Numbered from the stretch's first letter, positions 19,701 through 43,867 are shown. The stretch is DNA of 64,000 bases from Botryllus schlosseri (GCA_051294905.1 CM119384.1:4588001-4652000); one strand, 5' to 3'. Notes: generated from the sequence alone by a model not told the origin. Made by a program: numbers and translations.

Positions 19701-22700
19701 GTTACCAACTACACACAGCCGGAATCAATGCTCCGAGAATCTAACGAATCGGAGAAATCTCTTTCGAAATCGGGAGGATTCCCGTCTCAAAGAAATTAAT
19801 AATGTGTCTGCTACATTTTGGCACCTATCCCTCCTATTGATCAGACTGCTATGGATTCTATCGTTAATGTCCCGTATATTGGCGCTTCCGAGAATACAGA
19901 TGGTCTCTACGTGTTTCGCAACAAGGGTGCTACGCTTCAAAGAGTGCTGCCTACACCAGTAATGAGTAGGACGATTGTTTTCTGACCTAAAAACGAATAA
20001 TGTTTGTTTTAAAATTTGAAAACCTTAACATTTTTTGACATTTAAAATTTTGACTAATGGAGAAAGCAAGAAATTAAATTATACGCCACATTGTATGAAA
20101 ACTCGAATTTTAGTACGGTCATTTATTGAAATTTTCAAAAGAACCACATGATTGCGACATACTGAAAATGGTTTGCACTGCCTGTCCTTAAGAAGTGGCT
20201 TGGCAAAAATAGATAAAGAATGATTAACAGTAGCAGTTGTTGGCTGCCAGGAAATACTCGCCCTAGTGATGAACATCATTCGGATTAGGACAGCATTCAG
20301 ACAGAATGTGGCAGTCGGATCTGATACGGATTCTATTTCAGATTTTTTTCTCGAAAAATTTAGGTTAGTTGTAGCATTTGACCGACAAGATGGCGTAATG
20401 GTGAAGCGCCCGGCTTCTTGATCGGTATAGGTCGTGGGTTCGATTCCCAGCCGGGTCAGACCACAGAACACTGGTAACACTATGGTATCCATGACCTCCA
20501 CCATCCGCTTATTACTATTGGAATCGCTCGTTGCCTTCGCCATTGGCAGTAATGTCATTATATCGTTACCCGATTTGAAGTCTTACTTTCTCGGAATGTA
20601 TATGCGATTCCTCTTCAGCATGGTCACATATGACATATTTTCAGGGCGAAGACGAAAATAAAGAGGCACGAAAACTAAAAAAACGAGAGAAGAAAATCGG
20701 TCACGTCAAGATCAAGAAAGTATTCACCGGATCCGAGTTGCAGGAGGTAAGGCCGTTGCTTGCGAGACTATTCCATTCAACCGATTGATCTAAATATCGA
20801 GCTCGCTTCATCTTGTCAGTGGCTGTTACTAGTCATGATATTTCGAAATTTTCATGTTTTTATACCTTATCCGTTAGGAATTAAATTTGTAAAGTTATGT
20901 AAACTTATGAATGCCCACCGCTCTCTCGCATATATATACATACAATCTATAGGCGTATATCACAGCATCTATGCATACTATGACTCCATATTTCGGACAT
21001 GGTCGTATATATGTAAAAGTCCTACCTATGTAGCGGACGATCCCCGATGTAGCGGTTGGACACGAATAAGGGGGAATATACAACACGATATATCACTATA
21101 CTATAACTGTAATAGGGGGCAGTATAGAGCACGGTTTCTACAGTATACAACATTAACCCTATCATCATGATTGTTGAATGTGGCGAGGTCCCAGCAGCAA
21201 TAACTATTACCCGAGGTCCCATTGCCTGAAACTGTGTTACCGAAAGCTTTTTACTTCAGGTTGCGTACACCAACAGTATTTATATCGCTTACGCTATCAA
21301 CGTGGTATTGCGTCTCGTCATAGAAGGCGTATTCATATTCTTGGGTTATCATCTTTTCAAGGTTATGGTGAGTATTACATTCGAAGAATATATTATTATG
21401 CTATAAGATGCAGAAATTTGATACCGATTATTATTAACGAAGGTGCTCAAATTATACATTGTTACTGATGATCATGATCACCTCTGTCGGTGATGTTTCT
21501 GACTGTATCAGACTGTGTCACTTAAACTGGCTACTCATCGAAATATCCACAACAAAATTACGTTCAAAGCGTAATTAATAATATATTTCATACGCAGGAC
21601 AGGTCCAGAGTCGACGAGATCACCCCTATCGATTTCCTACTGTTTCGAGTCCCAGCATTTTTCAAATGCGAAGGAACAAGTCATGCCGCCGAAAAGGCAT
21701 GCTCCCAAGCAATCAGTCTCGGTGGCGCGGTACCGTGTTGGGTTTCACGACCGTGGGTATGTCATACGCTCTACTGTGTTACATATTTAATATCCTTTCT
21801 TCGTCTTTATGATTTAGGCGACTATAGCAATCTATATTCTATGTTGTGCTATATTCAGGAAAAATCATTACTCATTGGATACATGAACATCCTGAGCGCG
21901 ATTTGCTTTCTCCTGAGCGGGTTTGAATTGATTTACCTCGCCGTGAAGGGATACCTCGGTTACATGAAGCAAGCTGGTAAAAGGTTGGTGTGCTTATTTG
22001 TATTTTCGTAACATGCTGACTTGTGTGCCGTTGTTATAATGGCCGTTTGCAATGTAGTTTGCTTAGGTTCACCTCAGGATCAAGATCTTGTAGTCCGTTC
22101 CTAATCAACAGTTCGAAAAATCGCGGGTTCTCCGAAAAAGCGGTCGCACCAAGTCATTCCGCGTGCCAGCAAAAAAACATTTCCAGTACCATGGCTGCGT
22201 GCCTGTAGAAGTGTAGATAGCAATGTTAGTACATAACAGAAGTACGCTTTCTCCATTCAGAGTAATACGACGAAGAGGCCGTGTAATTCAGGGAGGCTCC
22301 AGCAATGGGAGTCAATATTACCACACTAGTCGCCCTACTTTACCGAACTATTACTCTACAACGAATGCAGGGGAACCGGGTGAGTACATTATCAAACTCC
22401 AAGTGACCACATTTCAATTCATATCATGGTATAGGCTAGGGATGGTGTGAACGTGAGGTTCACGTTCGCGTTTTGTGTGTGAACCTCGGAAATTTAGAGG
22501 TTCACGTTCACAAACGAAACTTGCTTAGGTTCTGCAATGTGAACCTTTTTGTTTTATATATTGCAATTTATCACGTCATTATAACATCTTTGGTTGATAT
22601 TTATTGCATTTCAACTGCGGGCCACTCTATTCATGGCGCTGACAGCGTAAAAAATCAACACTAATCGAGCATACACCTTGACAATCTCAAATATTTTAGT

Positions 22701-25288
22701 TGCTTTGTTACAAAAGTTTGCTCGAAATCACCTGCTCTCAGTTTGTGAATATTTAGTGACTCTCCGCTGTGAGCTTGACCCGCAATGACACATAACATCA
22801 AGAGCGAAATACCCTACATGTAGCCAGAGAATGATGCTTATTTAAACAATCAATGGAATTGATTATTTTACCATTTGATTGCCCCAGTTGATACATTTGC
22901 CGACGCATAAGACGTCAATTTGTACTTCAGCATGTGGCATTATGTGGCTCGAGTCGTCGCTAGGTATCGTGTACATAAATAGAGGCTATCACTTCACTGA
23001 AATGTAGGGTTATAATTAGCAATGTGACGTCACGTGACGTCATGGGGTTCATGTTCGCATTCACACAGAACCTTTCAAAAAGGTTCGCGTTCACACGAAC
23101 CTGAACCTTTCAGAGGTTCACACCATCTCTAGTATAGGCCTAAACATATGTTTACGATTACTAATACACTAATCCGTCAGTCCTATATACGTTAATCGTA
23201 TAGAGATCCGACATAAAACGATTGATTCAACAAACTGCGCGATAGCCTGAATAATATGAATAAAGAATATGCACAGGACCGTTCCGTTGCCTATCCGGGT
23301 TACGTCCAATTCCTCATGTGGATATCGTGTAGGCCAGTGGCTCCCAACCTTTTTCGGCTCATCGCTCCCTTTTTAAGCTCCACACCGATCATCGCCCCCC
23401 CAAATATTGGGAACTAAAAAACAGCACTTCGGCAGCACCCCCCCCCGAAAAAACGTTGGTCTTTGGCCCCATAGCGTGATAAACCAAGCCCCAGACTCCC
23501 CTCAGCCAGTGGGCTTTTTGTCGCTAAATATAAGCTATACCCTATTTCATGTAGTGAGTCACCGTATCTCGCCTTGAAGCGCGAAGCGCGACAAATTCAT
23601 ATAATTCATGTTTGAATCGGTCAATATGGTCGATGTGGTATGTTGGAAAAGGTTGGACCCCTAAATAATAATTAATCATCTTCGGGCGGAATCGCTGTTA
23701 TATTGACTTCTTTACATGATGCTATTTAATTACCTCATATATCTGCTATGTCAGAAGATATAGATATCGTCAAAACGTACCAAACTAAAAGACGCACATG
23801 ATTTCATATTGGTATTTCTTTACTGGCAAATAATTTTTTCCTTACGGGATGGCATTTGTCCTATAGGGTTAAGGTCGCCAGGACAGGAACATTCGACGCC
23901 AGCCATCAGGGCGCCCATGAACAATTAAACATATATGTATACATATCGATGTTTTCAGTCAGCACAAGGGCATTCCTTTTTGGCCAAGGTCTTCTCGCTG
24001 CTGATCGTTCTGGCACACTTCTCGGAGGCGCATGTTACATGGCCTCTAACTTCATATGTCTTGGTGCGTCGTGGCGCAGTAATGGCCGACGCCGAAGTCT
24101 CCCATTTACATAAATCATGAGTATTTTTGTTGGGTGACGAGGACCCCAACATCAAGATACATGAAAATAGTAAATCGCGCCCAGCGCGAAAAATTCTTGA
24201 AAAAGTCCCATGAATTTCTAAAAAATTACTCTATCATTCATGTTAATTCACGAAATAATTTTGGGCTTCCTTCTATTTCGGGCCCCCCACCCCCTAATTG
24301 GGGGGTTTGGGGTGCGGTAGTTACGGTCCCGACTCCAATATAGCCGTTTTAACGCACCATCACCCCCCTATCGCCCCCTTTGTTGTTTTCGCCCCCTATC
24401 GCCCCTTCGTCCGTTTTCGCCCCCCTATCGCCTCCTTCGTTAGTTTCGCCCCCTAGACCGCCAAATCGCCCCCTGGGGGGAGATATCGCCCGCGTTGGGA
24501 ACCACCGGTGTAGACTATATGTTAACGAATAGTGTTTGCGTTACAAAAAAAATCCTCATAAAGCATGCAATGAGTTATATTCTGAATTAGATAGAAAAAC
24601 GACAAAAATCATCACGTTCATTTCATATCAAATCAGAGTTTATGCTCGTGAGCATGAGAAAAGCTAATAACTTTACACCAAGCCTGACTCGTGTCGCACT
24701 ATACAGTTCACCGTAAGCATGTTAGGAAATCCGAAGATTAGATAAGAAAGAGCATATCAATATTTCGCAAATTAGATTAGAATTATATTACCGGCATTTC
24801 GCTCCAATTAGTCTAATTAATTAATTAATTATACAACTGGAATTATTTAGTTATCCAAGTCTGTTCTCACGAGGCTGACTTTTGATTTATAGCATGCCAT
24901 TGGTACAGTCGCAACTCACGGTGATATCAATGGGCATACTGAACTCAGACTATCATTATGACATTGGGATTAAAAATTCTATCTGAGTCCTAAACGTCGG
25001 CGTCTCATTTCAGCGTACGGTTACGAAATCCACGGGGTACCGCAGAATGAACACATACCGATGGCTGTGATAAACGATGACGCGATGTCATCGGTTACGG
25101 GACACATACAGAGAGCGAACATCCCGCCAAGTGTGGCTGGGAGTCAAATGTATCCGTCTATTCCCGAAGACGGCGGAGATTTCAATAGAATGGGTCACGC
25201 AGAGTCCATGAGATACTTGGCGCCCCCTGTGCTCAGCAACGACATGAATATCAGGCCGCATGCACCAGGTTCACACTACGGCCCGTAA
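10781..25288 (+). CDS. Connexin B (gap junction protein), complete, 10 coding exons, 426 aa
   Basis: join(10781-10813,17017-17107,17794-17906,19421-19576,20645-20746,21260-21367,21598-21756,21859-21983,22261-22379,25014-25288) = 1281 nt, open to the stop. N-terminus [33 protein letters not shown]1 FECSTSEPGCTKMCFNEF (C-X6-C-X3-C), HIRFWSFQLLAVATPT, EL2 ending CWVSRPWEK, four TM segments. Confidence 0.93.
11180..11706. mobile_element. hAT MITE (TAGGGCTCTTC family) nested in the left arm of the foldback
   Basis: TAGGGCTCTTCGAAAATGAC...GTCATTTTTGAAGAGCCCTA; TSD GTGTGCAT/ATGTGCAT. The empty site is visible in the opposite arm near 15870. Confidence 0.9.
13595..15654 (+). mobile_element. Non-autonomous hAT element with GACTCGAGTC subterminal repeats and a transposase remnant
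   Basis: TIRs CAGGGTTGTAA...TTACAACCCTG; perfect TSD AGTTTTAG (13587-13594, 15655-15662); contains a remnant of the hAT dimerisation domain. Confidence 0.9.
14199..14330 (+). pseudogene. hAT transposase C-terminal dimerisation-domain fragment
   Basis: IPASSALVERVFSRCGFILRPCRFNIFEDLLSTLVFLRCNSLI* matches the hAT (I)P(A)SS..ERxFS.....LVFL.xN motif. No upstream catalytic ORF. Confidence 0.8.
16010..16480. mobile_element. Diverged copy of the TAGGGATGGTGTGAAC hAT MITE family
   Basis: Ends TATGGATGGTGTGAAC / GTTCGCACCATCCCA; internal similarity to 22437-23131. Confidence 0.7.
18800..19030. mobile_element. Diverged partial copy of the 1232-1826 MITE family
   Basis: Starts CATACTGTCCTATGCGGTGTGGAC and shares TTTGACCGGCTTGCCGAG and CTGATTACGAAAAT with the left arm of 1232-1826. 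Confidence 0.65.
20384..20500 (+). mobile_element. tRNA-derived SINE head of a second family
   Basis: A box TGGCGTAATGG and B box GGTTCGATTCC. The acceptor stem does not pair fully, so this is not an intact tRNA. The 3' boundary is uncertain. Confidence 0.55.
22437..23131. mobile_element. hAT MITE (TAGGGATGGTGTGAAC family)
   Basis: TAGGGATGGTGTGAAC...GTTCACACCATCTCTA; perfect TSD GTATAGGC (22429-22436, 23132-23139). Confidence 0.9.
23335..24507. mobile_element. Charlie/Buster-like hAT non-autonomous element
   Basis: CAGTGGCTCCCAACC...GCGTTGGGAACCACCG; TSD GTGTAGGC/GTGTAGAC; subterminal ATCGCCCCC repeats at about 24360-24490. Confidence 0.8.
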
Positions 25289-26026
25289 TAAGTCGGGAAA
25301 TTTTGGCCATGCTATACAAATTATCGCACTATTGATCATTGAAATAAGGCTCATTGCAACAAAATACTAAATCAATATCGACGAAAATATTCAAAATGCA
25401 TACATCTAATTTCCCGGATACCAGTACGAACGACAATAAATTGCTTCACAAGTGTTTACCCCCGAACATGTAATTCAGATGAAGCCCACGGGTGGAATGA
25501 TTGCTCATTTTACAGCAAGGTTATCATAGACAAAGACTCGATCATCTCATGTCGCTCTGACGCACGTATAGAATGGATGACCTATACAATATGAAAATTG
25601 TGTATATGAACTAGAAACACCAACCCTTTGGTTACACGTATCATGCGACTGTGACAAAATAAGTGCCTGCGTTTAGCATTACCCTTGTTTATTGTTAATT
25701 CGCGATCATCCGTGAAGCATAACTTGACAAGCTGGAGCTATACGCTAATTGTGCAATTTTCAATGTACATTGTACATCTATTCTGTGCCCTTTTTATAAG
25801 TTTTCCAGATATTCATGCTTTATATTTACTTTATTTGCAATTGCATACGTTGAGATTGCAGATAATGAAGCGATATACATTTAACTTTTCATTTTTACTG
25901 CGTGTGTAGTTCGAAGTGTTTGATTCCCGCTTCCGGGGTCTGGATCTAAAGGGGTAACACGGAATTTTCATTTGACCTACTCTTTGTCTAAGTTTCTGTC
26001 TCTTTGTCTTGTCTCTGCTAATCTAG

Positions 26027-26258
26027 AACAGTACGCATATGTGATGAATCATTGGTAGAACAGCGGCAATCACAAAGTACGAAAATTCCCAAAGAAAAGA
26101 CGAAGGAAATTATCGTCACCGATGAAAACCATCACCATTACAGACATTCGACGATTTCTAAGTTGAATGCAGGGCCTTATAGATCACCGCAATTAGATTC
26201 AAATCCGAAGTCTGGATCCTTTACGCAGTTGCTTGACAGACACTTGAAATCGCACTAG
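26027..26258 (+). CDS. Candidate alternative terminal exon of connexin B
   Basis: A long pyrimidine tract, a ctaat branch-like site and ctag at 26026 precede a 77-codon open frame in phase 2 (TVRICDESLVEQRQ...DRHLKSH*). Phase 2 matches the connexin B exon 8 donor at 21983. No transcript evidence. Confidence 0.45.
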
Positions 26259-29200
26259 ATATACACAATTATATAGCGAAAGTGCGGATTGGTACGTGTT
26301 GATTAGGTTTTTTTTGTATATCAGATCCAAAGTACCAACTTACGTATTTTAATGTGTAACAGCAGCCACGCCCTCTTCAAATTCGATATATTTTATACGT
26401 TTGAATCGCAAATCACGATTTCATACAATAAAAACATTGACGAGTACTGCGTTTATGGTATTTAAATTGGAACACGGGGAAATTCTGGTATGAGCTGAAC
26501 GCCAATCAAGCGTACGAGTTAGTGCGTTGTTTTGCTATTGATTACAATATATGCCGATAGTTGGTCTGTGTTACGTAATATTTGCAGTAGCTCTCGTGAC
26601 TGAAATTCCAGCGAAAATGTATTGATTAGCTGGAATTTGATATTTAAAAGATCTATAGTTGGCCCTCGATCATATTCTGTCTCGCTGTAAAAAGTGCCTT
26701 GGGCTGATATACTGTCCATTGTACTGTCGATTCTATGATATACTCTCCGGGCCCATGGGATTGTACTTTTTGACAATCTCCGATGGCGTAGTTGATACCG
26801 TGCGCCGTTTCACTCCTTAACTTTTTGTGGTATTTACCAACGTAAAAAAGAATCGCTCGTTGTTCCAATGATACGCTCTACTGAGCTTGCGAAGTTTAGG
26901 TTTTTTGTCATGGCGAATGAAGGAAAGTACATGATTGCGAAACCTTGCGACACCAATTACCCGGATAGCTCTCGCAAAGCATTTACGACAGAGCGCTTTG
27001 GAAATAAGCAATACATTTATTATTGTTCTGTTCAAGTTTTCTGCCAGATTTCTGCAATATGGACTCGCGAATTTTCAAGTATAATACGTTTTGGCCTACA
27101 CGGGAAAGTGAGATTTACCACGATGAACAGGGTGACAACATGTCTCATACCTCTGCATCACAGGTGTGTGATGTGTTTTTCTGTAGGTCGGGACCGAATT
27201 GACACCCCTCGAATGAGTTAACTCATGACTACATACACCTGTACTCAAAAATTCGCTATAGGCTACATACAATGAAGGTTTTTGAACGAAATAATATTTT
27301 CATGGATTCTTCAACGATGAAATCACTATTAGTCAAGTCAAGTCACAGAATCGTCTTCATTACGCTGCTAATTTGGTTCTGTGACCATTTTACGACCAGT
27401 TAACGACGAGGATAGTGGGTTGTGCTCGCATTCATGACAATTTCAGTCAAACTCTGCGCAGCTATAGTTATCAGGTATATGCGTTATCGAAACTCACAGT
27501 ATGGCGTTGAATTGATAGGAAGCATTGATGAAGTGCAGTAAAATCGAGGGTACATCAACTGAGTAATGAAATTGTGAAGTGCGGCAAAAATCGTTTGACT
27601 TACAGTTCATTTGCGTGACAGAAAGAAGGTTTCACATGGCAGCTGATACGAATCAATCGAGTTTTATCCATAATATAACTCCATCGCTAACTTCAACCCG
27701 TAAAATGATCCAACCGCTAACCCTTCCATTATATGACACTCACATGACCACCATTGGCATTATCTCTCAATTGAACTGAAAATGCATTTGTCCCAATTGT
27801 GCGCTATTTCGAATTTTAGATGATCTATGTTCGATCAATTGCATATTGGAAATGTTGCAATCTCATTGTTTTGCTATTGTCAGTTGGGCGTTGCAATAAT
27901 TGTAGCAACTTGAAAACTTAATTCTGCGTTACACTCCTTTATATGTTTCGGTCGATGTACAAAAAATAGTATAAACCCGCGATGTGTCACTTTCACATTT
28001 GAGTTAGCTTAGTCATCGTGATTAAGAGGCGAGAAAGCATAATGGAGCCGTTTGCTATTGAATGATCGTAATCAATTGCATCTCATCGGGTTATTATGCT
28101 CACAGTCGCGGCAGTTTCCGCGGGTATTGTGCATCATACGCATGGGAGCGAATTTCCTGCGATACTCTGCATCTCATTCAATTTGTGTGCAGGCGTATCC
28201 AGTGCAGTCAATTGATGCCCATATGATGTTGATAACTAATGTCAATAGTCGTAATCGCAAGGCATACTGCCTACACAATTTTCGTGAGATTGCAATCGTA
28301 ATAGCAATCGACCGAAGTATTAACTTGATCGACTTATCCCTTGTACCTAGGGTTGCATTTAAAACGAACATATTTAAAACATGGACCCTTGTTTAAAACA
28401 TGTTTTTATTAGCCATGACATCACGAATCTTTAATTGTATCGTCACAGTGAACTGACATTAACAATTGAAAATAAGGGGAAATCTGACTCCTTTGTCGAA
28501 GACTGTCTTAAACGGACCAACAAATATCTTCTAACAGTCTCTACATTGTAATTTTTGCGGTCGGCGGTCATCATCATCAGAAGTCAGAACATCCATTCAG
28601 TACCAATGATCTATAAACACGTGCTATAAATATTGAACCGACGACGATTTCGAGGGTTCCAACAATTCTGTATCGTGTACGTCGAATATATCTGGCGCAA
28701 ACCGTCCGTATAGACTCATACTTCATGTTTCTTCGAAAGTATTTACACAGATATGGCATAATTATGGAACTTTCGAAAAAAATTATTCTTTACAAAATAG
28801 CAATTTTTAAAATCACCGTTCAAAACATGTTTTAAACAAAGTGTTTTAAATAACCATTTGTTATAAATTCAGCCCTACTTGAACTATAGTGAGCTGCTGG
28901 ACAAGACTTTGTCCCAACCAAATGCAAAAACATTCTTTTTCATCGCGCAGTCCAGACTTGGCCATTTGCTATTAATTGAGTTATCCATTAGATTGATTAC
29001 CAGTTTGAGAACTTCCACATATTTTTAGGCGATAATGATCGAAGAGGCATGGGATTAATCACAAACTATAAGTAATTCGTACAAAACGAACACGGCATTT
29101 AGTGTTTGTAAAATCACCATTTCTTGATGATTCAAAAACAAAGGATATATTTTGTAGCCTTGGGCGGCCTAAGTATCTACAATTCGGTTTTCGAAAGTGC

Positions 29201-31839: not shown

Positions 31840-34800
31840 ATGTGGAGTTTTCTACAAAGTATTCAAGAACAGGTTAGTATCTATGATATATATACCCAAG
31901 TAAAGGTGATCTTACAATCACAGACAATATCCCATTTCTATATTTTAGGTTGCAAAGTACAGCACGTGGATTGGACAACTTTGGTATCTTTGCGTATTTG
32001 TTTTTCGACTATTCGTGGTTGTTACCATTGGCGGAGCAGGTATTTATATTTGTGTATCAATGAACGAAGGGGTGAACAATTATAGAGTTAGGAAGGACCA
32101 AGATTCTATTATCATTTCTCATAAAGCTACCGTTGGTCCAGTGTACCATTTCAGCTAGAGCTATGTTTAAAATGAAGATGAATTTAAAACACAGATTTTT
32201 AAAAAAGAGAGCTTGTCTTAAACATCCTAATTTTGCAACCTTATGGCATCTTCGATATCAAAATGCTAAATTCACACAACACGGAGCAATATTAAAGTGG
32301 TAATTATGAGGTAACATTGTAAGATAGGTTCACAGCTGTGCGGTACAGCACAGAAGACTACATTTCAACATTTCATAAAGCTATCCGATTATTTTTTGGC
32401 CGACTCTGATTTTGCACGAATACGCGGGTAGATGGTAAAAAACTGCACGAGCATCCACCATTAATCATATTGTCACGTTTTCACAATCTGTCGTAACATC
32501 TATAACCCAAAATGTCACCAAACATCTATCAATTCGAAAAGGCTGTCTTACAAGGACGTGCAATGCTTATATTATGAACCGCAGGAATTTCCACCGGTGT
32601 TGTGTTTTCGCTTCCACAAAAAGTTTCAATACCGCCTATTTATATACTAGTATGGAGTTCAAATGGAAATAAGAATTTGTGCCCGCAAAGTTTACATCGG
32701 ACTTCATAATACATGATAATAATAATCAATGGGTTTCTACGCGAGTGTGCATTGAGTGAATACAGACTTGTTCTGTTGTGGCTGTTGCACGAGACAATAA
32801 CATATCAGCTTGTTGATGGTTTTGGTAGCTTACAAACCGAGATGAGTATCCGTAAATCTGTTTTCTGATGATATCTTATGACGTGTAGCTTTCGCCTTCT
32901 AAAGGCAAGTACTCTGAATAAATGCCTAAGCAAATTGGAGTCCATGTGAGCACTTTCGAATATTAGGTTTGTTGAAGATTGCATTGCAAATTGAATAATT
33001 GCGAATGCATGCGGGTTACGGATATGTTTATATCAGTTTTGAAGTTTGTGCTTGCAGACAACATTCGAAACATGCTCAAACCTGTTTTGTGTGTTCCAAT
33101 AGTCGATTAGTTGAGACAGTCACAGTATTTTGACTCGAACTTTGTAATATGTTGTAGTGACTCATCATTGCCGCCAATTCAACCATCTAGTGCAGTGGGT
33201 TACTAACGTTATTTTGTTACGTTCCGCCCTTTACCCACTTTGAGTCCATTTATTCCTCTCCATATTACAAAAAAGGGAAGTCATAAATCTTGGAAATGAA
33301 AATTCGTCCAAAGTGTATAGTAGAAAACCATGCTGCTAGGTTTCTGAGACTCATTCCTCATTCCGATCGGAAGTAAAGGCGGGATCGGAGACCACACAGC
33401 CGGTTGCCAGTTTGCCGGTTTTCGGTTATAGGCCAGCAGGCTTTCATTTCGTCGATGAAAACAGTCGATCGACTCGCGATCATTGACCGACTAGAAATAT
33501 ACCGAATGACAAGTGAAATCGCCCATCGTGTCGATCATCCTCATACCAGTCAAGCGGAGGCTAGGTGTGCGAAGGATTATGACCCATGTATCCCACATAA
33601 CCCACTTTGTAGCCAGACAAATAATAAGTGGAGGTATCCCAAAAAGTCCCGAATCGCCAATACATATTCAGAAAAAGGATGGCAAAAACTGCATGGTCCA
33701 ACGATCTGACAAAGAAAGGTGTTGTATGGAGGTGGTTTTGGGTTGTTTATTGCATCATCACAACGGATACTTGGCTATTATTATGTTATACAGTGGTTCT
33801 CAATGTTTTTGACCTCGCGGCGCCCTCTCAAAGGGAATAATAGTTCGCGACACCCCAGCACTTCAAGTATACTGGGTGCACGATTTCCGACGCTATAGTG
33901 ACCATGAAAATGTCATCAAACGTACGTCATGCAACTGTTCAGCCGCAGAATCTGATTGTGGTTATTAAAAAAGGTCATTATTTTCGATAAGCCTCATCGC
34001 CTAGGATGACCATTTTTAGTCACCGTTATGGGAGCGGGCGTAGCAAAGATATAGAGATCACTAGGCGTAGTGGTAAATTTATCGCGAGTTTACCGTCATT
34101 GACGCTGCCGTTCCAGGCAGCATCGCAGCACGTTCCGAAGTGTTGGAGATTTACCTGGGCTCCTCCCATACTTCGCTGCTATTACATCGTCCTAACTAAA
34201 AAGACCAGTCGATGACAAATACAACGAAATTGAATGAGAAAAAAAAGTCGTCTAAAATATTGTCGACGAGATCAAGATGAAGCACAGTTACATAGGTAGA
34301 GTTTTAACAGACCATATACTTGGTCGATTCAGCCTCATCCTATCTTTTCATTACATCCAATTGCGTCTTGTGTATCACATTGTATATTGACTGTATTTGG
34401 AGCGGATAAAATAATAGAACTGTCGATCACACCGATTAAGTCTAGTCCGAATGCTACTCAGAATTTTAGGTATATGTCGACTCAACTCTCTGCCTCCTTT
34501 CTCGCGGCACCATCGGTTGAGATTTGAGAATAGGCTCTGCCCGTCCAGAGAGTCCAACTTGATAGACGATTTACCTCAACATTGACCACACGGACAGTAG
34601 CAAGCGTACAGGATTACAGGACTACTACAGTTGGTTCATCACAACAGCAGAGTTGTGATGAATAAGATACATTTCATCGGAGTTATTTCAGTAGGGTTAC
34701 CGAACTAACATAAAAAAATGAGAGATCGTACTCCATCGATATTGCGACACTTTTTTTATATGCTACAGCCATCTGAACAATATATTTAGTGTGATAACAC

Positions 34801-37800
34801 ATGCGATTCAACAAATTTAAAAATAAAATCATTCCCTGAACTCAAAAATCCGTCTCCAGTGGAAAATCCTGCCCCGGTTGGGATGGAATTGTATCATATA
34901 AAATTACTTGTCAATTGGCTTAATATAATCTCATTATAATCATTCGTTTGTTTCAGTCTACGGTGATGAATTATCAGAGTTCCAGTGTAGTACCAAAGAG
35001 CCTGGGTGCGAAAAGATGTGTTTCAACGTATTCAGTAGAATGTCTCACTTAAGATTCTGGTGTTTCCAGGTGAGAAAAGGGAGGGGTAGATCGTTTTACT
35101 TCTTTGCGAATATATTCCCATATTGTCAGACATATCTTATGACTCTGCCATCTAAAACAGCCAATTTGTAGGGGAAACTTGCTGCGGACGACAAGTTATG
35201 TTTCTATAATTCTGCGCACAAAATATTTCTAGAACTAATAACATTTTTATAAAATGCTAGAGACGTCGAAGACAGCAGCGTGAGGAAATGTATATTAAAT
35301 CAATCATGATCGGCTGTAATTCAACCTTAACAAAATGTGCTGAGACTTTCTCCCATTATAAGCCGTTTTATATCATGTTGTGTATGTTCCAGAGAATTGT
35401 TCATTTTTATACTTCTCTGCCGAAAACTATCTGCTCTGCTATATTTGACACGGAAGAACTTGATGTTTAGGGATATAGTAACAGTCGTTGCAACGATTAG
35501 TGCGAGGGTGGTTCTCCCCGTACGAAAAGCTATGCTTATATATATTTATACAATTGAATAATACATTCATATTGAAATAAACAAGAATATGTTCCGCTGA
35601 CTCTCGTCAGGGATAATCGTCAGCAACTAGAACAGAGTTGGAAAGAACATTGTATATCAACAATCGACTCTCTCAATTGTCTCCAACTCTCTAAACTACA
35701 GTAGTTGGTGACGATTACGCTGAAGAGTGTCATCCGACAATATTCAGGCTTATAGTTTAATGTGAATATACTAGGGTTGCCATACGTCCGGAATTTCCCG
35801 GACATGTCCGGAATTTCACTGTTCAAACTGCGTCCGAGAGGAAATTCTAAAATATGCGTAAATGTCCGGAATTTTGAAGGCTCGAATTTGACTCAATCTA
35901 TTTTCGTAAATTAGCATAAAAATCGTATTTTGGGGCAGTTTTATGTTAATTGAAATTTTTCTTCGCGCTTCGCGCGATTTACTGTCACATGTATCGATAT
36001 CGATGTGGAACCACCGCCCTTGCAAAAAAATCAAAAATAAATAAAAATAACCATCTTTTACTGAAATAAGTCTAATAGTAATCGCAATTATAAGAGAACG
36101 ATATATTCCTAGAGTCGGTCGAAAACGTTTGGATGCTTGCGTCGAAGACAGTGGTCCTAAACCCGGGGTCGATTTCCTTTATTCTTGGGATGGCGAAGAT
36201 TTTGAATGAATAATCAGTTTTCAAAATAGGCCGTGAGTAAATTTGGGAAGAAAAGGTAATGGCCTGGTTTTAGTAATCAGCTTATCCATTTCTTTTCAAT
36301 GGCCACGGAGCATAACATTACGGACCATGAAAGGTTGCAAACCACCGGATGTGCAATCTCCTGGTGTGGACCGGCATTTTGACTCATAAACAGTCTCATC
36401 CGAACGGCGGCCAGATGATTTCATTCGGCCCGTGACGAAGTCTGTTGTAGCTAGCAATCACCAGAGCTCACATTAGAGATGGTCCATTCCAGCAGGACCT
36501 ATGTTCCACTGCTGTATACAATCGATAGACAAGGCTTTGCTAGTGTGACCTCATCTTAACATCCGCTAGTAGGCGCTAAAGGGTGTCCGGCTACCAAAAT
36601 ATGGTAACCCTAGAATACACTTTTCAATTGCCTATTTAAGTTCTTTACCTCCTAGAGCAGGGGTGGGCAACCTGCGACCGTAGAAGGGAATTCGTGCGGC
36701 CGTCGACATGCAAATGTAAGCTACGAATTCACTGCCGAATTTTCGGGAGATTTTGATTAACCTTGAATCTTTTCTTCGCGCAGAAATTTGTTTCTGGTAC
36801 AATTAGGCGATTCCATTATAATTCCACTATACCGACAATCCTGATGGGGGGTAAAGAAATAACAGCATGCAACAAAGTTACTATTAACAATTGGCCCACC
36901 CGAAGATGCATTTATCATGTATAACTTTTATAACAAAAAGGTTGCCCACTACTGTCCTAGAGTCTCTTTATATATATTTACATACGCTATATATTTTCAT
37001 ACGTCTGAGGTCCATAAATGGTTTTCTGAATTCCTAATTATTAGCATATGACGGATGATTGATAGGTATTAATCCTCAAGTTGCATATAATACCCGGACA
37101 AGTGCAGAGCTCTACGTGTGCGACCGGCCGAAACCTTCAATTGAAAAATAATAACTTGCCGCGCCCATACTGCGCTCCATAATTACTTATATATAATAGG
37201 GCTTGAATTTGGTTCAATTCCAACCAGTGGAAGCGGAGTTATTGCCGTCGTAAAATTTGGATTTGAATAAAATAGTATTTACGGTGAGCACAACTAAGAA
37301 TCGGTCACCGTAAATACTATTTTATTCAAATCCAAATTTTTCGACGGCAATAACTCCGCTTCCACTGGTTGGAATTGAACTAAATTTGGTGAGCATCGTT
37401 TCTGTAGACAGCTTAACACTTTCATGGGGTGAACAGAAAATTTTCAAAATTTTTATTTTTTATTTTTATATAATAAATAGAAACTTTATTCTCCTGTAGC
37501 AAAGCGGTTACTGGCTGGAATTGAACCAAATTTTGTGTGTAGGCTTAAATTAGGTAACCTAACAATTTTATCAAGTAGCCAGTACGATTTGAGAAAAAAA
37601 GTCATTTTTGAAGAGCCCTAATATATAATCCTACCTAATGTGTTTACATATATTAAGCGATCGTTGGAACCTTCCCGATGAAACTGATGTGTTTCCACTA
37701 ACAATAAGCTTGCAACATATTGGGATTGTTTTGGTAGATTTTGACCGTTCGTATCCTTCTGTTTCAGCTGCTGGCAGTCACGACGCCTACCGTTCTATTT

Positions 37801-40800
37801 CATTTTTATTCGATGAGCGTAATAGCACAGATCCACAAGTCAGAAGACGAAGAAAAGCGATTACGGGAAGAGAATCATGTGAACGACATGCAATCCATGC
37901 TGTCGTCACAGCTACCCTCAAATGAGGTGGTTTATCTGTAATTCTACACGTATTCCCTTGATGACTATGCGTTACTTTTTAGAGCTAATCCAAATAGCAC
38001 ATTATCAGATTACTAACGTTATGGTTCGCTCACAACAGCTGCAGTATAGCTCAGTGGTCGCACCGCTGATCGTTTTCCGCTTTAGATGTTCCTCAAAACT
38101 CAGTCCCGTCCGAGCAAGTCAATCATGGTCTCAAGCAGACTACTGTAAAATTTGTAGCTATTTCAAATTAGATTCGACTTAGAATAACTGACTTCGAATC
38201 ACTTGGAATTGAAGTTAAACTTCAAAATTTGGAATAAATACAACAAAAATCAAGTTCAGCCCACATACCATCACAGCTCATTCGCATATGTTTGAGATTG
38301 GAGAATATATGTACGACTGTACGTACACCTAGCTTGGCTCGTTTCGTGCAATACATAGTTGTGATGCAGCATTTTGAGTAAAACCAGAAATTTGATTAGA
38401 ATTAAAATTAGAGCAGAGAAATATTTCACAAATTATATTATATTATTAGATTACTGGTATTTTGCTCTAAGTAGTCTAATTAGAGTCTGGTCGTAAGCCC
38501 CAAATCCAAATCCAATTATGGTGCGGCTTACTTGGCACTGCTGAGTGCGGATATATCTGTAATAGTGGCAATTCGAATAGGTCTTTGATATAGCAACACT
38601 ACCGCCTAGCATGTCAACGGTTGGAGCTGACCCACTGCGAAAACCAGCACATTATCTTTGACAGCTAGCCTTTTGTGGAGTAACGTTCAAGCGATTACCA
38701 ATTAGGGAGATTTTTACTACAAGACACGTCATATTTAGGATAATGAAAAAACGATGAAAACTATGAAGAAATTGGAGAGGCGCAAAAAGAAAATCGGCGA
38801 GATCAAGAAGAAAAAGGTGTTCAGTAGCGGTAAAGGTGAATTAACTGAGGTAGGCTATAACAGTGCTCTTCAACCTTTTTCGTCGTGGTACACCCTTTTA
38901 ACGTTTACTCAAAACTCGTACATCCCTGTCCACATTACTTACCGATTCCATAATAAGCTTAATCCAGGCGCCGCATTCAACCGTAGAGTCGTCATGGCCC
39001 TCTGGACGATAAATACTCATGTTATATTGACCATCAGAAACTCCGCAAGGAGGAGAGCCCTTGTGGTATTCTGTGCCATCGCTGAACTCTTGAGATCTAC
39101 CCTGTATATAAAATCTGCTAGTAGTAGAATCAGAACGACCCCGCAAGCTTACTATATATATACCAAAATTGCGAGGATAGAAACGAAAATCCAAGTCACC
39201 CTGAATCGAGCTCAGCGTGAAGAAAATTTTCAATTCAAATTAAAATCTCTCAGCGTTTTAGGTACCAATGTCGTTAATTCAAATTGTTTATTGACGGCCG
39301 CCAACGCTGGTATAAAAATGTGTGGACGGCCGCATGATTATTGTTTTACGGCTGTATGCGGCTTTATGTCCGCAGCTTGGCCACCCTGGCCTGATCGACA
39401 AAGCTGCAACGTACAGGAAATGCTGAATAATATTCAATGTTCGAAGCTACCAGACCACCATCTAACACAGTGATACTCAAACTCGGCCCCGAGACCCCTG
39501 CAATTATGTGCACCAACTGTAAAATGATGAGGAGATACATTTGCTTATGACATCACAAAGGGGATGTAATTTACAACCTGCGTCATTTGTTATGAACATT
39601 GTACGGCATTGCACATCCCGTCAACCTGTTCTGAAGCATAAACTTGCGAATTTATCGTAATAGCTAGTCTTCCGTCCATTGCAAAGCGTATCTGGTACAC
39701 ACCAGTACACCCCATCCGAGTGGTACATCCATTAAGAATTCTGGTACACCCTGGGGTGTACGATACACCCGATTGAAGAGCCCTGGGCTACAACGATACG
39801 TGTTTCTGTAGCGATGATCAATGTTCTTGAAAAATATTACGGGGTTGATATCTGCAATATAGTTTTGGTTAGATACCTCGCGGTACACTATTTCACACAT
39901 GCTACATTTCTCAGGTGGTGTTTACAATGACAATCCACGTGGCATACTACATCAGCATCCTTATTCGGCTAGTCGTGGAAGGAGTATTTATATATTTAGG
40001 GTATACACTGTTCAAATTCATGGTAAGTATTCCTGAAAACTTGTTAAATTACAGAGGTACGTTAGTTAACTGAGAAATAAAGCAGTGTATTATTAAGTGA
40101 CAGCTTGCATGACGGAATCTTAGGGAAAAATAAAGGAAACTAAAGGCATGCTTTATAATTTATATCAGTTACTTCATAAGCAATTAGGCATATACCAGAG
40201 GTTCATGAATATTAACGATAAGCAGTTCGCAGTCCACGTGAATTCTTTACGGCTTAGAGCGACTAAACTATATATCAGCAGCGTACATACAAATGCTCAC
40301 CACTGACATTTCTGATATACTTTTGCTTTATCTGCCCTAATCGCGTGAAGCGCGAAATATGTTCATAATTTAAGATTGAATCAGTCAGTCAGTCAGTATG
40401 CTTTTATTCATCTCACCAACAAACACAACGTGTAAATTGGTATGGATTGGGAGACGACGAGGGACCGAAAGGTCTTAGATTCACTCGCCACACAGCATCG
40501 GTCAATAATATTGGTAATTGCAAATATATTGCTAGACATTTTTATCCTCTCTCAGTCCACGTGTTCAGATTAAAGGCAGGGATGTCTGGGGTGTTATCGT
40601 CTCGATCCATTTAAGGCCCGTAATAATAATTAAACATATTCGGGCGGGTCCGTTCGCATAATTACTTCTTTGCATGTTGTTATTTCATGACCTCTTCATC
40701 TGCTATGTCAAAAATATTGAGATCGCTCACACGCACTAAATTCAAAGACGCACACCATTTCAAATTTATATTTCTTCACTGCCAATTTTTATCTGTGTGA

Positions 40801-43800
40801 TGGCATTTGTCCTTTGGGGTTCAGATTGTCAGGCAGGAATATTCGGCACCAGCCATTTAGGCGCCAATGGAAATTAGACAGCGGTCAGCATAAGGGAAGT
40901 CCTTGACGGCCAAGGTTTTCTGGCTGCCAAACTGTTTGGCCCATTTAAACATTATATGTCTTGGTGCGGCGTGGCGCGGTAATGGTCGACGCCGAAATGC
41001 CTATTTGTACATACTCTACAATATAATCGCTAAATCGCGCGTGGCGCGAAAATAATTTGAAAAAGTTGCACAAAGTTTCAAAAAATGCTCTCTAATTTAT
41101 GGTCATTCATGAAAATATTTTGAGCTCCCTTCGAGCTCAGGCCCCGCAATTAAGGGATTTTGGGTGCGGCCGTTTCGGTCCTGGTCGTATGATAAACTAA
41201 TAGGCTACCGTGATATAGGTAAGTTAGTTGGATCACATTTAGGCCTATACCGCTTTACGTAACAAATACACAGGCATTCAACGAAGAATTGAAAAATATT
41301 AAGGATCAAAGTCAGGAGGAAGCAGAAGCTGATGACGCATTGGATTTTTTACGGTTCAGCGTACCAGCGATGTTCAAGTGTGATCCAAAACTTGATGCGG
41401 CTGTGGAAAAAGCGTGCAGTCAAGTAGCTACTGTTGATGGTTCGGTGCCGTGTTGGGTATCAAGGCCTTACGTAAGCTCGACATCACAAATTTCCGATCG
41501 GGACACCTGATTAAGCTATTTTTCTGTATATTATACCAGGAAAAAACGGTTTTGATTCGATACATGAATTGTTTAAGCGCTGTTTGTTTTGTACTGAGTG
41601 CCGTCGAGCTTATTTACATCCCAGTCAGAATGTTTCTAAAAGAAAGAAAAGAACGGTAAGTGTGTGACCTTACGTGTGGGATTCGTTCATATAGTCTACT
41701 TATTTTTAAGATCCATATATTGTATCTGTAGTCTACTTGTCGCGTATTCGATTCCTATAGATATAGATTCTGTGGTTGCATCATTTTATTCCAGATTAGT
41801 ATACGCGTTCATTCGGTATACGCTATCCAGCGCTCCTTTTTAGCGCTCGTACTTCTTGAGCTTTCATTAAATTATTTCGTACCCACTGTCCATTGTCAGG
41901 CCGCCACCAAACGCTATTCTTGAGTCCCAACTCCCAATAGGGTTTTCGACACAACTTCTAATACGGGTTATTCCATCACTACCCTTCATACTTATGATTC
42001 AAGAACGGATGCACTCTTTCCGCATCAAATAAAGCCCGGGATAACGCAATTCACTATCGCAAGATTCATATATTTATTTGTATCAGCCTACCAGGCATTT
42101 GTTGTAGACGTGCAAAGTATGAAAATTGTTTAAAGTTAGTTAGTGAATGAATTATGTCAATAATGTTGGTACTTGAATATGTTGCTATTATCATTTGACC
42201 CTCTCTCCGCCCACATGTGCTCAGATTTCCCGGTAGAGTTGATGGAGTTGATGACTTCTAAAATTTACGCCGCGACATTGTACATCTTAATCCATGTCAC
42301 TGTTCATGACTTTCCTTTCAGTCAGGTAATTGTGAGGCGACAAAGGAACGGAAATGCATATGTTCAAAATCAATATGCAACGCATATGTTTTCGCCAGCT
42401 CCGAGTTATCAGGCGGGAAAGCGGTTCTCCGGCAATCTACCTTCAAGTAAGTGGACGACAACGATCGCATAGATTCGTATCAGAATGTTGTACTATCTGG
42501 TTGACGCGAATATATCCTACTTATTTGTCTGGTACACAGAACAGTCCACTTCAATTTCTCAGGCTGCGGACAATCCGAGGAGACAATCGTTGGTGATATA
42601 CTATCTCGTAAAACTAGGCATATGGGCTTAAAACTAGTAAAAGTGATGCAAATCTATATCGCAAAGCTGCTTTCCCGAACGAAATCTATTGAGTGAAAAC
42701 TAAGTATTTTGTTTCAAAACTCGTGAAGTAGAAGGGTTCTTAAATCACAAAAGTAATCATCATCACAGTAAGTATAGAGGTAGTAAGCACATGATAGGCT
42801 ATTTGAGTATTACGAAAAAGCAGAATCACTTCGTTACTTGCCACCTCTATGGGCTATAGTGCAGAGGTTGGCAACCTATTTGCTAATCACGGCCACATTT
42901 CGATTACTTATGTAGCCTACGGCCGCATTCCAAGGCATAGCCGTAATGAACTAACTGGAAGCAAAATACCTATGTTCAACTGTCCACAGTGTCCAGTGTC
43001 CATGTCCATTTCCGATGACCTCTATGGGCTATTCTACTTTTCATATCGGAGTGGTAATGTGGAAATCGCGAGTGGTAATGTTTTGAATAGTTACCGGGAT
43101 TTGCTATGGTCGCGCCAAGCGCGAAAATTTTTCAAATTCACGAATGGAGTCCGTCATTGATAGTAGCAGTATCACATATTACTGTCAAATATTAATCATT
43201 TCTCGACCCATGTGATCAGATTCAACGGTTGATATGGAATTGATGGCAGGAGTGCTTTCGCAAATTTAGTGCATGTTATAAATGATAGTTCATCTTCGGA
43301 TGGGCCAATTGTTATTAGTAACTTTGATGCATGCTGTTATTTCTTCACCCCGCCCCCATCAGGTTTGTCGGTATAGTGGAAATATATTGGAATCACCCAA
43401 ATGTATCAGAAACAAATTTCTGTCATGAGGAGCACACGACTCCGATTCCGGTTCAGATTTCAAAGGCGCTACTATATTGAAATCGAAAAATGAAGTCACA
43501 TCGCGAAGAAAATCTCTCGAAAATTCGGGAGTGAATTCGTAATTTCAATTGCGATGACTACTTTGGCCTCCTCTGGGTATATGAGACTAAACTTCTTTCT
43601 ATTTCAGATTTCGTATATGCCAATTCTGTGATATCGGAAAGTGTGGAACCTCCTCGATTCACGGTTCCCCATGATGGGATGATTCCTGGAGTAAACAACC
43701 CGCATACGGCGAGCTTATATCCACCCACGATGAACAATATCGCCATGCACAATTTGCACATGCACAACCAAGCCTACGTGCGCTATAATGGAGAACGAGA

Positions 43801-43867
43801 ACAAACCACCCCGCATCCAAACATCGCGCCGTCGGAGTTTAGGTCTGTGAATGACGGCATGGCGTGA
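31840..43867 (+). CDS. Connexin C (gap junction protein), complete, 10 coding exons, 437 aa
   Basis: join(31840-31872,31949-32039,34957-35069,37768-37926,38739-38849,39915-40022,41274-41471,41540-41655,42322-42446,43608-43867) = 1314 nt, open. [31 protein letters not shown]; EL1 [18 protein letters not shown]; [16 protein letters not shown]; CWVSRPYEKT. Intron positions and phases are the same as in connexin B. Confidence 0.93.
35772..36612. mobile_element. hAT MITE (TAGGGTTGCCATA family)
   Basis: TAGGGTTGCCATA...TATGGTAACCCTA; TSD GAATATAC/GAATACAC. Related fragments lie at 1-76 and about 9860-9951 (ends GGACGTATGGTAACCCTA). Confidence 0.8.
36658..36954. mobile_element. Charlie/Buster-like hAT MITE
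   Basis: CAGGGGTGGGCAACC...GGTTGCCCACTACTG; perfect TSD TCCTAGAG. Confidence 0.85.
37206..37620. mobile_element. Truncated copy of the TAGGGCTCTTC MITE
   Basis: Right end GTCATTTTTGAAGAGCCCTA and an internal palindrome, near-identical to 11180-11706 and 60898-61460. Confidence 0.85.
40340..41190. repeat. Dispersed repeat homologous to the interior (about 23570-24345) of the 23335-24507 element
   Basis: Colinear shared blocks, e.g. GAAGCGCGA, ATCTGCTATGTCA, GATGGCATTTGTCCT, ATATGTCTTGGTGCG, TAAATCGCGC. Confidence 0.75.

What the first reader, a model, noticed from the sequence alone, without database searches (positions are those of the whole stretch)
21598..41471. Connexins with a radically elongated second extracellular (docking) loop
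Seen: EL1 is canonical (C-X6-C-X3-C) in both complete genes, but EL2 is C-X10-C-X11-C in B (CEGTSHAAEKACSQAISLGGAVPC, exon 21598-21756) and C-X11-C-X11-C in C ([25 protein letters not shown], exon 41274-41471). The segment before the first Cys is also long, and in C it carries an acidic insert ([21 protein letters not shown]). Established: vertebrate EL2 is typically C-X4-C-X5-C and largely determines hemichannel docking and heterotypic compatibility. Inference: this paralogue subfamily may dock with a wider gap or a private compatibility code, or act mainly as undocked hemichannels. I cannot check whether this spacing is already described in other tunicate connexins.
Basis: partly seen in the sequence, partly recalled or inferred. 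Interest (0 to 1): 0.78.

Follow-up and report, generated by a model that had tools for sequence, protein, structure and literature searches.

The report
Tunicate connexins with long docking loop
Two expressed connexin (gap-junction channel) genes in this sea-squirt-type genome have a second outer loop about 28 residues longer than in vertebrates, but about half of this genome's connexin genes and connexins of at least five other tunicate species share the long loop, so it is a lineage-wide trait of untested function rather than a peculiarity of this locus.

Summary
Gene B (10 exons, 10781-25288) has EL2 C-X10-C-X11-C. Gene C (10 exons, 31840-43867) has C-X11-C-X11-C. EL1 is canonical C-X6-C-X3-C in both.

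Spliced RNA contigs from three studies, plus raw RNA-seq reads, confirm gene C's EL2 exon. They place its acceptor at 41304, not 41274.

The long EL2 is not private to these paralogues:
- This genome has 13 long-EL2 loci and 13-15 canonical C-X4-C-X5-C loci.
- Long EL2 occurs in annotated connexins of Styela, Ciona, Clavelina, Phallusia and Oikopleura.
- All long-EL2 proteins fall on one side of a single tree branch, also when the EL2 columns are removed.

AlphaFold models of two relatives give a normal connexin fold. They show a confident extra helix around the middle EL2 cysteine. The vertebrate docking motif (P-C-P-N-T-V-D-C) is absent.

The loops carry no N-glycosylation sites. Loop lengths vary widely among subclades. 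Whether these channels dock only with their own kind or act as hemichannels is untested.

Verdict: real and expressed, but new members of a known, tunicate-wide kind. Interest is modest.

The parts
10781..25288 (+). Connexin gene B, 10 coding exons, 426 aa: 10781-10813, 17017-17107, 17794-17906, 19421-19576, 20645-20746, 21260-21367, 21598-21756, 21859-21983, 22261-22379, 25014-25288
   Evidence: All junctions are GT-AG and in frame. Exon sizes and phases parallel gene C. The model is colinear from residue 1 with Styela P0008 and with transcript-derived P0251. The k-mer share of 0.32-0.33 in many small runs equals the 0.33 expected if only exons 6-9 are present. Exons 1, 9 and 10 rest on homology and phase only.
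17794..17906 (+). Gene B exon 3: EL1 with C-X6-C-X3-C
   Evidence: Pfam PF00029 E 2.5e-13. Translation.
21598..21756 (+). Gene B exon 7: EL2, C-X10-C-X11-C
   Evidence: No Pfam Connexin match for this exon alone.
21859..21983 (+). Gene B exon 8: EKS... plus TM4
31840..43867 (+). Connexin gene C, 10 coding exons, 427 aa: 31840-31872, 31949-32039, 34957-35069, 37768-37926, 38739-38849, 39915-40022, 41304-41471, 41540-41655, 42322-42446, 43608-43867
   Evidence: Splice sites. Joints 40022>41304, 41471>41540, 41655>42322 and 42446>43608 are seen in RNA contigs of X1, X2 and X5, and two of them in raw RNA-seq reads of X22. The model is colinear over its whole length (59% identity) with the 423-aa transcript-derived protein P0243.
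34957..35069 (+). Gene C exon 3: EL1 with C-X6-C-X3-C
   Evidence: PF00029 match at C14:4622953-4623072.
41304..41471 (+).
   Evidence: joints and contig pieces 41303/4-41471 with 0-1 differences; translation.
41274..41303 (+).
   Evidence: the joint runs 40022>41304, and none to 41274 was reported.
430..554 (+). TM4 exon (exon 8) of upstream tandem paralogue gene A; its EL2 exon lies about 3.4 kb before the window
   Evidence: Gene A's EL2 is at C14:4584499-4584624 and is C-X10-C-X11-C.

Best explanation
B and C are two transcribed, intact, 10-exon members of an old tunicate-specific connexin clade. Its hallmark is an EL2 about 28 residues longer than in vertebrate connexins.

Shown here:
- The three EL2 cysteines, the canonical EL1 cysteine ladder, the four-helix connexin fold and the V-P-C-W-V-S-R-P-[WY]-E-K motif are all kept.
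- The extra residues lie (i) before the V-P that precedes Cys1, (ii) between Cys1 and Cys2 (+6/7), and (iii) between Cys2 and Cys3 (+6).
- In models of close relatives, the extra residues form a confident short helix flanking Cys2, set between the two conserved beta-strands.

Inferred:
- The EL2 cysteines are pinned by disulfides to an unchanged EL1. The extra residues must therefore bulge out at the tip, where vertebrate connexins carry their docking residues.
- The proteins most likely still form hexameric channels that dock head to head. They would dock through a clade-specific surface, that is with partners of their own class and not with the canonical C-X4-C-X5-C connexins of the same animal.
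- The feature is ordinary for tunicates and is not an innovation of this locus.
For: Sequence and splice sites.

Transcription and splicing of C. Indirect support for B.

Other long-EL2 loci in this genome:
- Five in a C14 array.
- C13:19.55 Mb, C13:10.27 Mb and C17.
- Four single-exon copies at C13:6.66-6.70 Mb, and C8:2.96 Mb.
- These stand against 13-15 canonical loci.

Long EL2 in named proteins of Styela clava, Ciona intestinalis, Clavelina lepadiformis, Phallusia mammillata and Oikopleura dioica.

Phylogeny:
- The long/short split is one branch. SH-aLRT is 97 with EL2 columns and 83 without them.
- B and C each pair with a different transcript-derived protein, evidently of another species (SH-aLRT 96 and 100). 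The duplication is therefore old and both copies were kept.

Structure:
- AF2 models of P0008 (57% identical to C) and P0243 (59%) have EL2 pLDDT of 78-94.
- Both show strand - helix - Cys2 - helix - strand.
- Fold match to solved Cx43, Cx26, Cx46/50, Cx32 and Cx36 has TM-score 0.80-0.87 by target.

Other points:
- The inserts sit at the site of the vertebrate P-C-P-N-T-V-D-C motif.
- No N-X-S/T sequon occurs in EL1 or EL2 of B or C, and only 3 of 39 clade members have one.
- From established knowledge, tunicates have morphological and electrical gap junctions.
Against: No functional test of any long-EL2 connexin was found in the papers I could read.

Loop lengths vary widely within the clade (Cys1-Cys2 X5-X14, Cys2-Cys3 X7-X18). 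Vertebrate spacing is almost invariant. This looks like relaxed docking geometry.

Between orthologue pairs the Cys1-Cys3 stretch is 60% identical and the pre-Cys1 stretch 31-52%. EL1 is 76-79% identical.

Cnidarian connexin-like channels with elaborate loops did not form gap junctions in HeLa cells (bioRxiv 10.64898/2026.06.13.731801).

The canonical-class genes alone could account for tunicate gap junctions.

No hexamer or dodecamer could be modelled here. The models are of relatives, not of B or C themselves.
Confidence: 0.5

Rival explanations
1. The long-EL2 connexins, B and C included, do not dock. They work mainly as undocked plasma-membrane hemichannels (for example for ATP or small-molecule release). 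Tunicate gap junctions would then be built by the canonical C-X4-C-X5-C class.
For: Loop lengths at the docking tip vary widely in the clade. The vertebrate docking motif is lost. The Pfam connexin model does not recognise the EL2 exons. EL2 is less conserved than EL1 between orthologues. As precedent, cnidarian connexin-like channels with elaborate loops form hemichannels but no junctions, and Cx23 and Cx29/Cx31.3 are cited as non-junctional. A full set of 13-15 canonical genes exists in the same genome.
Against: All three EL2 cysteines and the flanking strands are strictly kept. The loops carry almost no N-glycosylation sites, unlike non-docking pannexins. The EL2 core is predicted as a well-ordered structure. 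The clade has expanded to about half of the family, which would be an unusually large set of pure hemichannels.
Confidence: 0.3
2. The long-EL2 connexins dock in the ordinary way and are also compatible with canonical-class hemichannels. The extra residues would pack sideways and leave the docking face and the gap width essentially unchanged.
For: EL1, which contributes half of the docking wall, is canonical. The strands carrying Cys1 and Cys3 are conserved. From memory, White et al. 2004 (FEBS Lett 577:42) reported functional channels from Halocynthia connexins in oocyte pairs. That paper is not held, and I do not know which class was tested.
Against: The +6 insert between Cys2 and Cys3 replaces the very residues that make the trans hydrogen bonds in solved vertebrate channels (established knowledge from Cx26 and Cx46/50 structures; alignment).
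Confidence: 0.12
3. One reading: the elongation is a special innovation of this local paralogue group (A, B, C), with an acidic insert in C that gives a private code.
For: B, C and their nearest relatives share A-C-S-Q-[AV], where most of the clade has A-C-x-Q-H. C's EL2 is net acidic, with 11 acidic and 4 basic residues.
Against: The same architecture is found in 13 loci of this genome and in five or more other tunicate species. Half of the supposed acidic insert is intron.
Confidence: 0.03
4. Artefact: the long loop comes from a wrong exon prediction or from decaying pseudogenes.
For: One paralogue elsewhere (L003) has an in-frame TGA.
Against: The EL2 exon of C is contiguous in spliced RNA contigs of three studies. 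Both genes have open frames through 10 exons with GT-AG sites. Single-exon paralogues show the long loop with no splicing at all.
Confidence: 0.02

Closest known systems
Tunicate connexins already in public databases, e.g. Styela clava 'gap junction beta-2 protein-like isoform X2' (P0008), Ciona intestinalis 'gap junction beta-2 protein isoform X1' (P0015), Phallusia mammillata A0A6F9DCX3 (P0024), and Clavelina lepadiformis entries
   Same: Same clade on the tree. They are 45-57% identical over about 300 residues. They share the long EL2 with three Cys (C-X10..11-C-X11..13-C) and the V-P-C-[WF]-V-S-R-P-x-E-K-T motif. They also share the multi-exon gene structure that the literature describes for tunicate connexins.
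   Different: B and C have A-C-S-Q-[AV] instead of A-C-x-Q-H after Cys2, and lack the Trp of the F-[LI]-W motif before the V-P. They also carry longer C-terminal tails (about 427 aa against about 350).
Vertebrate connexins (Pfam PF00029; solved Cx26, Cx32, Cx36, Cx43, Cx46/50 channels)
   Same: N-terminal helix, four TM helices, EL1 C-X6-C-X3-C, three Cys in EL2 and S-R-P-x-E-K-T after Cys3. Fold TM-score is 0.80-0.87 for relatives' models.
   Different: EL2 is C-X10/11-C-X11-C instead of C-X4-C-X5-C. About 16 extra residues lie before Cys1. The P-C-P-N-T-V-D-C docking motif is absent. A helix is predicted around Cys2. The genes do not belong to the alpha-epsilon subfamilies and have many introns.
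Canonical-class tunicate connexins (e.g. Ciona savignyi H2ZD63 = P0123; loci on C11, C12, C16 and C8 of this genome)
   Same: Same genome, same family, multi-exon genes.
   Different: They keep C-X4-C-X5-C and the W-P-C-P-N-T-V-D-C motif. Their TM3-EL2-TM4 part is about 50% identical to vertebrate GJA3. They fall on the vertebrate side of the tree.
Non-chordate connexin-like (CxL) domains with elaborate extracellular loops (bioRxiv 10.64898/2026.06.13.731801)
   Same: Connexin fold with enlarged extracellular loops. These raise the question of hemichannel versus junction function.
   Different: The anthozoan CxLs described there have two Cys per loop and are often fused to NLR domains. B and C have three Cys per loop and no extra domains. 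Relatedness was not tested here.

Membership tests
Connexin family (Pfam PF00029) | Significant match to the connexin profile | tested here: met
   B's EL1 exon scores E 2.5e-13 at 50.8 bits, above the 31.3-bit cut-off. C's TM2 exon scores E 1.5e-5. Genome scan hits lie at both genes. The orthologue-like P0243 and all close relatives carry PF00029. The EL2 exons alone do not match.
Connexin family (Pfam PF00029) | N-terminal helix plus four transmembrane helices with the connexin fold | tested here: met
   Tested on relatives only. AF2 models of P0008 and P0243 (57-59% identical to C) show it. Foldseek top hits are all solved connexins, at E 5e-14 and TM-score by target 0.80-0.87.
Connexin family (Pfam PF00029) | EL1 cysteine signature C-X6-C-X3-C | tested here: met
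Connexin family (Pfam PF00029) | Three cysteines in EL2 | tested here: met
   These cysteines are invariant columns in alignments A1 and A2.
Vertebrate-type connexins (alpha-delta subfamilies) | EL2 spacing C-X4-C-X5-C (C-X5-C-X5-C in GJB3) | tested here: not met
   C-X10-C-X11-C in B and C-X11-C-X11-C in C. The vertebrate rule comes from PMC7066803 and from 190 of 195 hits.
Vertebrate-type connexins (alpha-delta subfamilies) | Phylogenetic placement inside a vertebrate subfamily | tested here: not met
   B and C fall in the tunicate-only long-EL2 group, opposite vertebrates plus canonical tunicate connexins.
Tunicate long-EL2 connexin clade (defined here) | Long EL2 (Cys1-Cys3 17 or more residues apart) ending in V-P-C-[WFY]-V-S-R-P-x-E-K-[TS], preceded by V-P-x-x-[FY]-x-C | tested here: met
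Tunicate long-EL2 connexin clade (defined here) | Groups with the other long-EL2 proteins when the EL2 columns are left out of the tree | tested here: met
   One change of state on the tree, branch SH-aLRT 83.
Gap-junction-forming channels | Head-to-head docking of two hexamers giving cell-to-cell conductance | not testable with these tools
   Complex prediction allows at most 4 copies and 1000 residues, so no hexamer or dodecamer could be built. No functional paper on this class was readable.

The most novel reading that the evidence does not exclude
Tunicates may carry two structurally distinct connexin classes that split before, or at the base of, the tunicate radiation. One is a vertebrate-like docking class. 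The other is a long-EL2 class, about half of the family and including B and C, that cannot dock with the first. It would act either as a separate, orthogonal gap-junction compatibility system or purely as hemichannels. If a tree rooted with non-chordate connexin-like proteins places the root between the two classes, the ancestor of tunicates and vertebrates had both classes and vertebrates lost one.
Probability: 0.3. Interest if true: 0.6.

Novelty: new member of a known kind. Interest (0 to 1): 0.3.

Why it matters
EL2 sets which connexin hemichannels can dock. A whole clade with a rebuilt EL2 tip is a natural experiment on how docking specificity, or loss of docking, evolves. It also bears on the current debate over whether early connexins were hemichannels or junctions.

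For this window the practical results are:
- Two corrected, RNA-supported gene models.
- The loop is a clade trait already present in public tunicate proteins, not a local oddity.

Tried and rejected
Literature. Seven full-text searches and several reads found no open paper describing EL2 cysteine spacing or docking for tunicate connexins. White et al. 2004 is not held. Cruciani and Mikalsen 2007 (reference 17 of PMC7914757) did not appear in any search. I therefore cannot say whether specialists have already noted the long loop.

No Halocynthia connexin appeared among named hits, so I could not tell which class was tested in oocytes.

Pfam on the EL2 exons alone gave no connexin match. This reflects their divergence and is not evidence against membership.

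The whole-library phmmer search with C's EL2 exon found only 10 hits, all unnamed Logan proteins. It served only to find the orthologue-like P0243 and P0251.

Folding B or C themselves was not possible. Their spliced proteins have no reference, and I did not type them in. Relatives were folded instead.

Complex prediction was not used, because 2-4 copies cannot represent hexamer-hexamer docking.

My first exon coordinates for C were off by 1-3 nt and were corrected.

A regex that mis-assigned cysteines in a few proteins was replaced by anchoring on Cys3.

Only one read-laying run was allowed, so B's splicing was not seen directly. It has only k-mer share support.

The earlier scan note on an alternative C-terminal exon of B at 26027-26258 was not examined.
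Full report
**1. What is there**

- B reads C-EGTSHAAEKA-C-SQAISLGGAVP-C, which is C-X10-C-X11-C.
- C reads [25 protein letters not shown], which is C-X11-C-X11-C.

The window is C14:4588001-4652000 of a 495-Mb assembly. That assembly gives 74 exon-wise matches to Pfam Connexin. B's EL1 exon matches PF00029 at E 2.5e-13. The EL2 exons alone match nothing.

**2. Gene models**

I used tblastn with tunicate homologues and inspected splice sites. Both genes have 10 coding exons with GT-AG introns, and they share the same exon phases.

| Gene | Span | Length | EL1 exon | EL2 exon | Exon lengths (nt) |
|---|---|---|---|---|---|
| B | 10781-25288 | 426 aa | 17794-17906 | 21598-21756 | 33/91/113/156/102/108/159/125/119/275 |
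| C | 31840-43867 | 427 aa | 34957-35069 | 41304-41471 | 33/91/113/159/111/108/168/116/125/260 |

Both models align from residue 1 with Styela clava P0008 and other tunicate connexins at 50-57% identity. B and C are 55% identical to each other.

C is colinear over its full length (59% identity), including the C-terminal tail, with the 423-aa transcript-derived protein P0243. B's exons 1, 9 and 10 rest on homology and phase only.

A third paralogue, A, ends in the window (TM4 exon 430-554). Its EL2 exon lies just upstream of the window and is also C-X10-C-X11-C.

**3. RNA evidence**

Spliced contigs of three runs from three studies, plus raw reads of a 2026 RNA-seq run, were laid on 39800-43800. 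They show GT..AG joints at 40022>41304, 41471>41540, 41655>42322 and 42446>43608.
- The EL2 exon is contiguous from 41304 to 41471 with 0-1 differences. The cysteine spacing is therefore present in the mRNA.
[10 protein letters not shown] is intron, and no joint to 41274 was reported.
- After this correction C begins its EL2 exon with DQSQ..., parallel to B's DRSR.... C is only two residues longer than B before Cys1. C's EL2 is still net acidic, with 11 acidic and 4 basic residues.

For B no reads could be laid, because the cap is one call. Many small runs hold 0.32-0.33 of the 31-mers of 21200-22400. That equals the 0.33 expected if exactly exons 6-9 are present.

**4. How unusual is the loop?**

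*Within this genome.* Six-frame inspection of connexin loci gives 13 long-EL2 loci:
- five in the C14 array
- C13:19.55 Mb, C13:10.27 Mb and C17:1.30 Mb
- four single-exon copies at C13:6.66-6.70 Mb
- C8:2.96 Mb

Their spacing ranges from C-X8-C-X13-C to C-X11-C-X11-C. There are also 13-15 loci with canonical C-X4-C-X5-C and the W-P-C-P-N-T-V-D-C motif.

*In public proteins.* Long EL2 occurs in:
- Styela clava (C-X8-C-X13/14-C, C-X10-C-X12-C)
- Ciona intestinalis (C-X8-C-X14-C, C-X11-C-X11-C, C-X11-C-X14-C)
- Clavelina lepadiformis
- Phallusia mammillata (C-X11-C-X11-C)
- Oikopleura dioica (C-X10-C-X7-C)

Canonical spacing occurs in Ciona savignyi P0123 and in three unnamed proteins. Of 195 non-tunicate hits, 190 are C-X4-C-X5-C. 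This agrees with PMC7066803.

*On the tree.* In a maximum-likelihood tree all long-EL2 proteins are one side of one branch, with SH-aLRT 97. With the EL2 columns removed there is still a single change of state, with SH-aLRT 83.

B pairs with P0251 (96) and C with P0243 (100). Both are transcript-derived proteins, evidently from another species. The B/C duplication is therefore older than that species split, and both copies were retained.

The long loop is thus the hallmark of an old, large, tunicate-specific clade. It is not a feature of this locus alone.

**5. Anatomy of the long loop**

Alignment against canonical connexins and against solved structures places three inserts:

| Insert | Position | Extra residues |
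|---|---|---|
| i | between the end of TM3 and the V-P before Cys1 | about 16 or more |
| ii | between Cys1 and Cys2 | +6/7 |
| iii | between Cys2 and Cys3 | +6 |

In total, B has about 50 residues from the end of TM3 to Cys3, against about 22 in Cx32.

Inserts ii and iii replace the P-C-P-N-T-V-D-C segment. From established knowledge of Cx26 and Cx46/50 structures, that segment carries the residues that bond across the gap.

AF2 models were made for two relatives:

| Relative | EL2 spacing | Mean pLDDT | EL2 pLDDT |
|---|---|---|---|
| P0008 | C-X10-C-X12-C | 81 | 65-93 |
| P0243 | C-X10-C-X11-C (as in B) | 78 | 78-94 |

Both give the same picture: one or two short helices before the V-P, a strand ending at Cys1, a helix on each side of Cys2, a short loop, and a strand carrying Cys3. 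The whole model matches solved connexin channels with TM-score 0.80-0.87 by target.

EL1 is unchanged. In solved connexins the three EL1-EL2 disulfides pair the cysteines in a ladder. I therefore infer that the EL2 cysteines stay in place and the inserts bulge out at the tip.

**6. Function**

No experiment on this class could be found in the readable literature.

Points in favour of docking competence:
- The cysteines and flanking strands are strictly kept.
- The loop core is predicted as ordered.
- N-glycosylation sequons are nearly absent: none in B or C, and in only 3 of 39 clade members. Chordate innexin homologues, by contrast, always carry one in their extracellular loops, and in pannexins this is held to block docking.

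Points against a shared docking geometry:
- Loop lengths vary greatly among subclades (X5-X14 and X7-X18).
- EL2 evolves faster than EL1 between orthologues: 60% and 31-52% identity, against 76-79%.
- Cnidarian connexin-like channels with elaborate loops gave hemichannels but no junctions.

My best estimates are:

| Reading | Probability |
|---|---|
| channels that dock only within their own class | about 0.5 |
| hemichannel-only | about 0.3 |
| ordinary promiscuous docking | about 0.12 |

**7. Comparison and novelty**

B and C are connexins by profile, by the fold of their relatives, by the EL1 signature and by the three EL2 cysteines. They fail the vertebrate EL2 spacing rule and do not belong to any vertebrate subfamily.

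Their closest known relatives are automatically named tunicate proteins such as "gap junction beta-2 protein-like" of Styela and Ciona, which show the same loop. The open literature says that tunicate connexins are distinct from the vertebrate subfamilies and often multi-exonic. I found no explicit description of the EL2 spacing, but the key papers are not held.

I therefore rate the finding as new members of a known kind. The clade-level question (private docking class or hemichannels) is interesting but not specific to this window.

**8. Verdict**

- Observation: partly confirmed. The cysteine spacing is exact and present in the mRNA, one exon boundary was wrong, and the acidic insert is halved.
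- Interpretation: partly supported. The docking tip is altered, but the trait is clade-wide and its function is untested.
- Interest: 0.3.

Noticed in passing
window 430-554 (+); C14:4515696-4629471: Gene A's TM4 exon lies at the window start. A, B and C belong to an array of five long-EL2 connexin genes on C14 (4.51-4.63 Mb), one of them on the minus strand.
   Followed up: partly
window 20645-20746 (B exon 5) and 38739-38849 (C exon 5): The cytoplasmic-loop exon encodes a conserved, very basic motif (K-K-I-G-x-[IV]-K-K-K-K-V-[FY] ... E-L-x-E-V). AF2 models of two relatives predict it as a confident beta-hairpin just before TM3 (pLDDT about 79-91). An ordered element is unexpected in a region usually treated as disordered in vertebrate connexins.
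   Followed up: no
window 21757-21858: The 102-nt intron between B's EL2 exon and TM4 exon has no stop and is in frame. Its retention would add 34 residues between S-R-P-W and E-K-S. This may well be chance.
   Followed up: no
window 42882-43015: A sharp RNA-depth spike (summed contig depth up to 438 in X2, and raw reads in X22) lies inside intron 9 of gene C, with loose ends on both sides. It looks like a repeat or a separate small transcript.
   Followed up: no
window 54178-54630 (+): An open frame matches the start of a von Willebrand factor type D domain (PF00094, E 2.9e-8). It is probably an exon of an unrelated downstream gene.
   Followed up: no
window 10814-17016: B's first intron is about 6.2 kb, against 76 nt in C. 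The 11-codon first exon (M-W-D-L-L-S-Q-F-K-D-Q) was found only by pattern and by its likeness to C's first exon.
   Followed up: partly
P0015, P0019, P0024, P0018, P0029 (Ciona, Clavelina, Phallusia and unnamed relatives): Some clade members carry one or two additional cysteines in the pre-Cys1 segment of EL2. This suggests an extra disulfide in that subclade.
   Followed up: no
L003 = C13:6657600-6661193: One of the four near-identical single-exon long-EL2 copies at C13:6.66-6.70 Mb has an in-frame TGA and may be a pseudogene.
   Followed up: no
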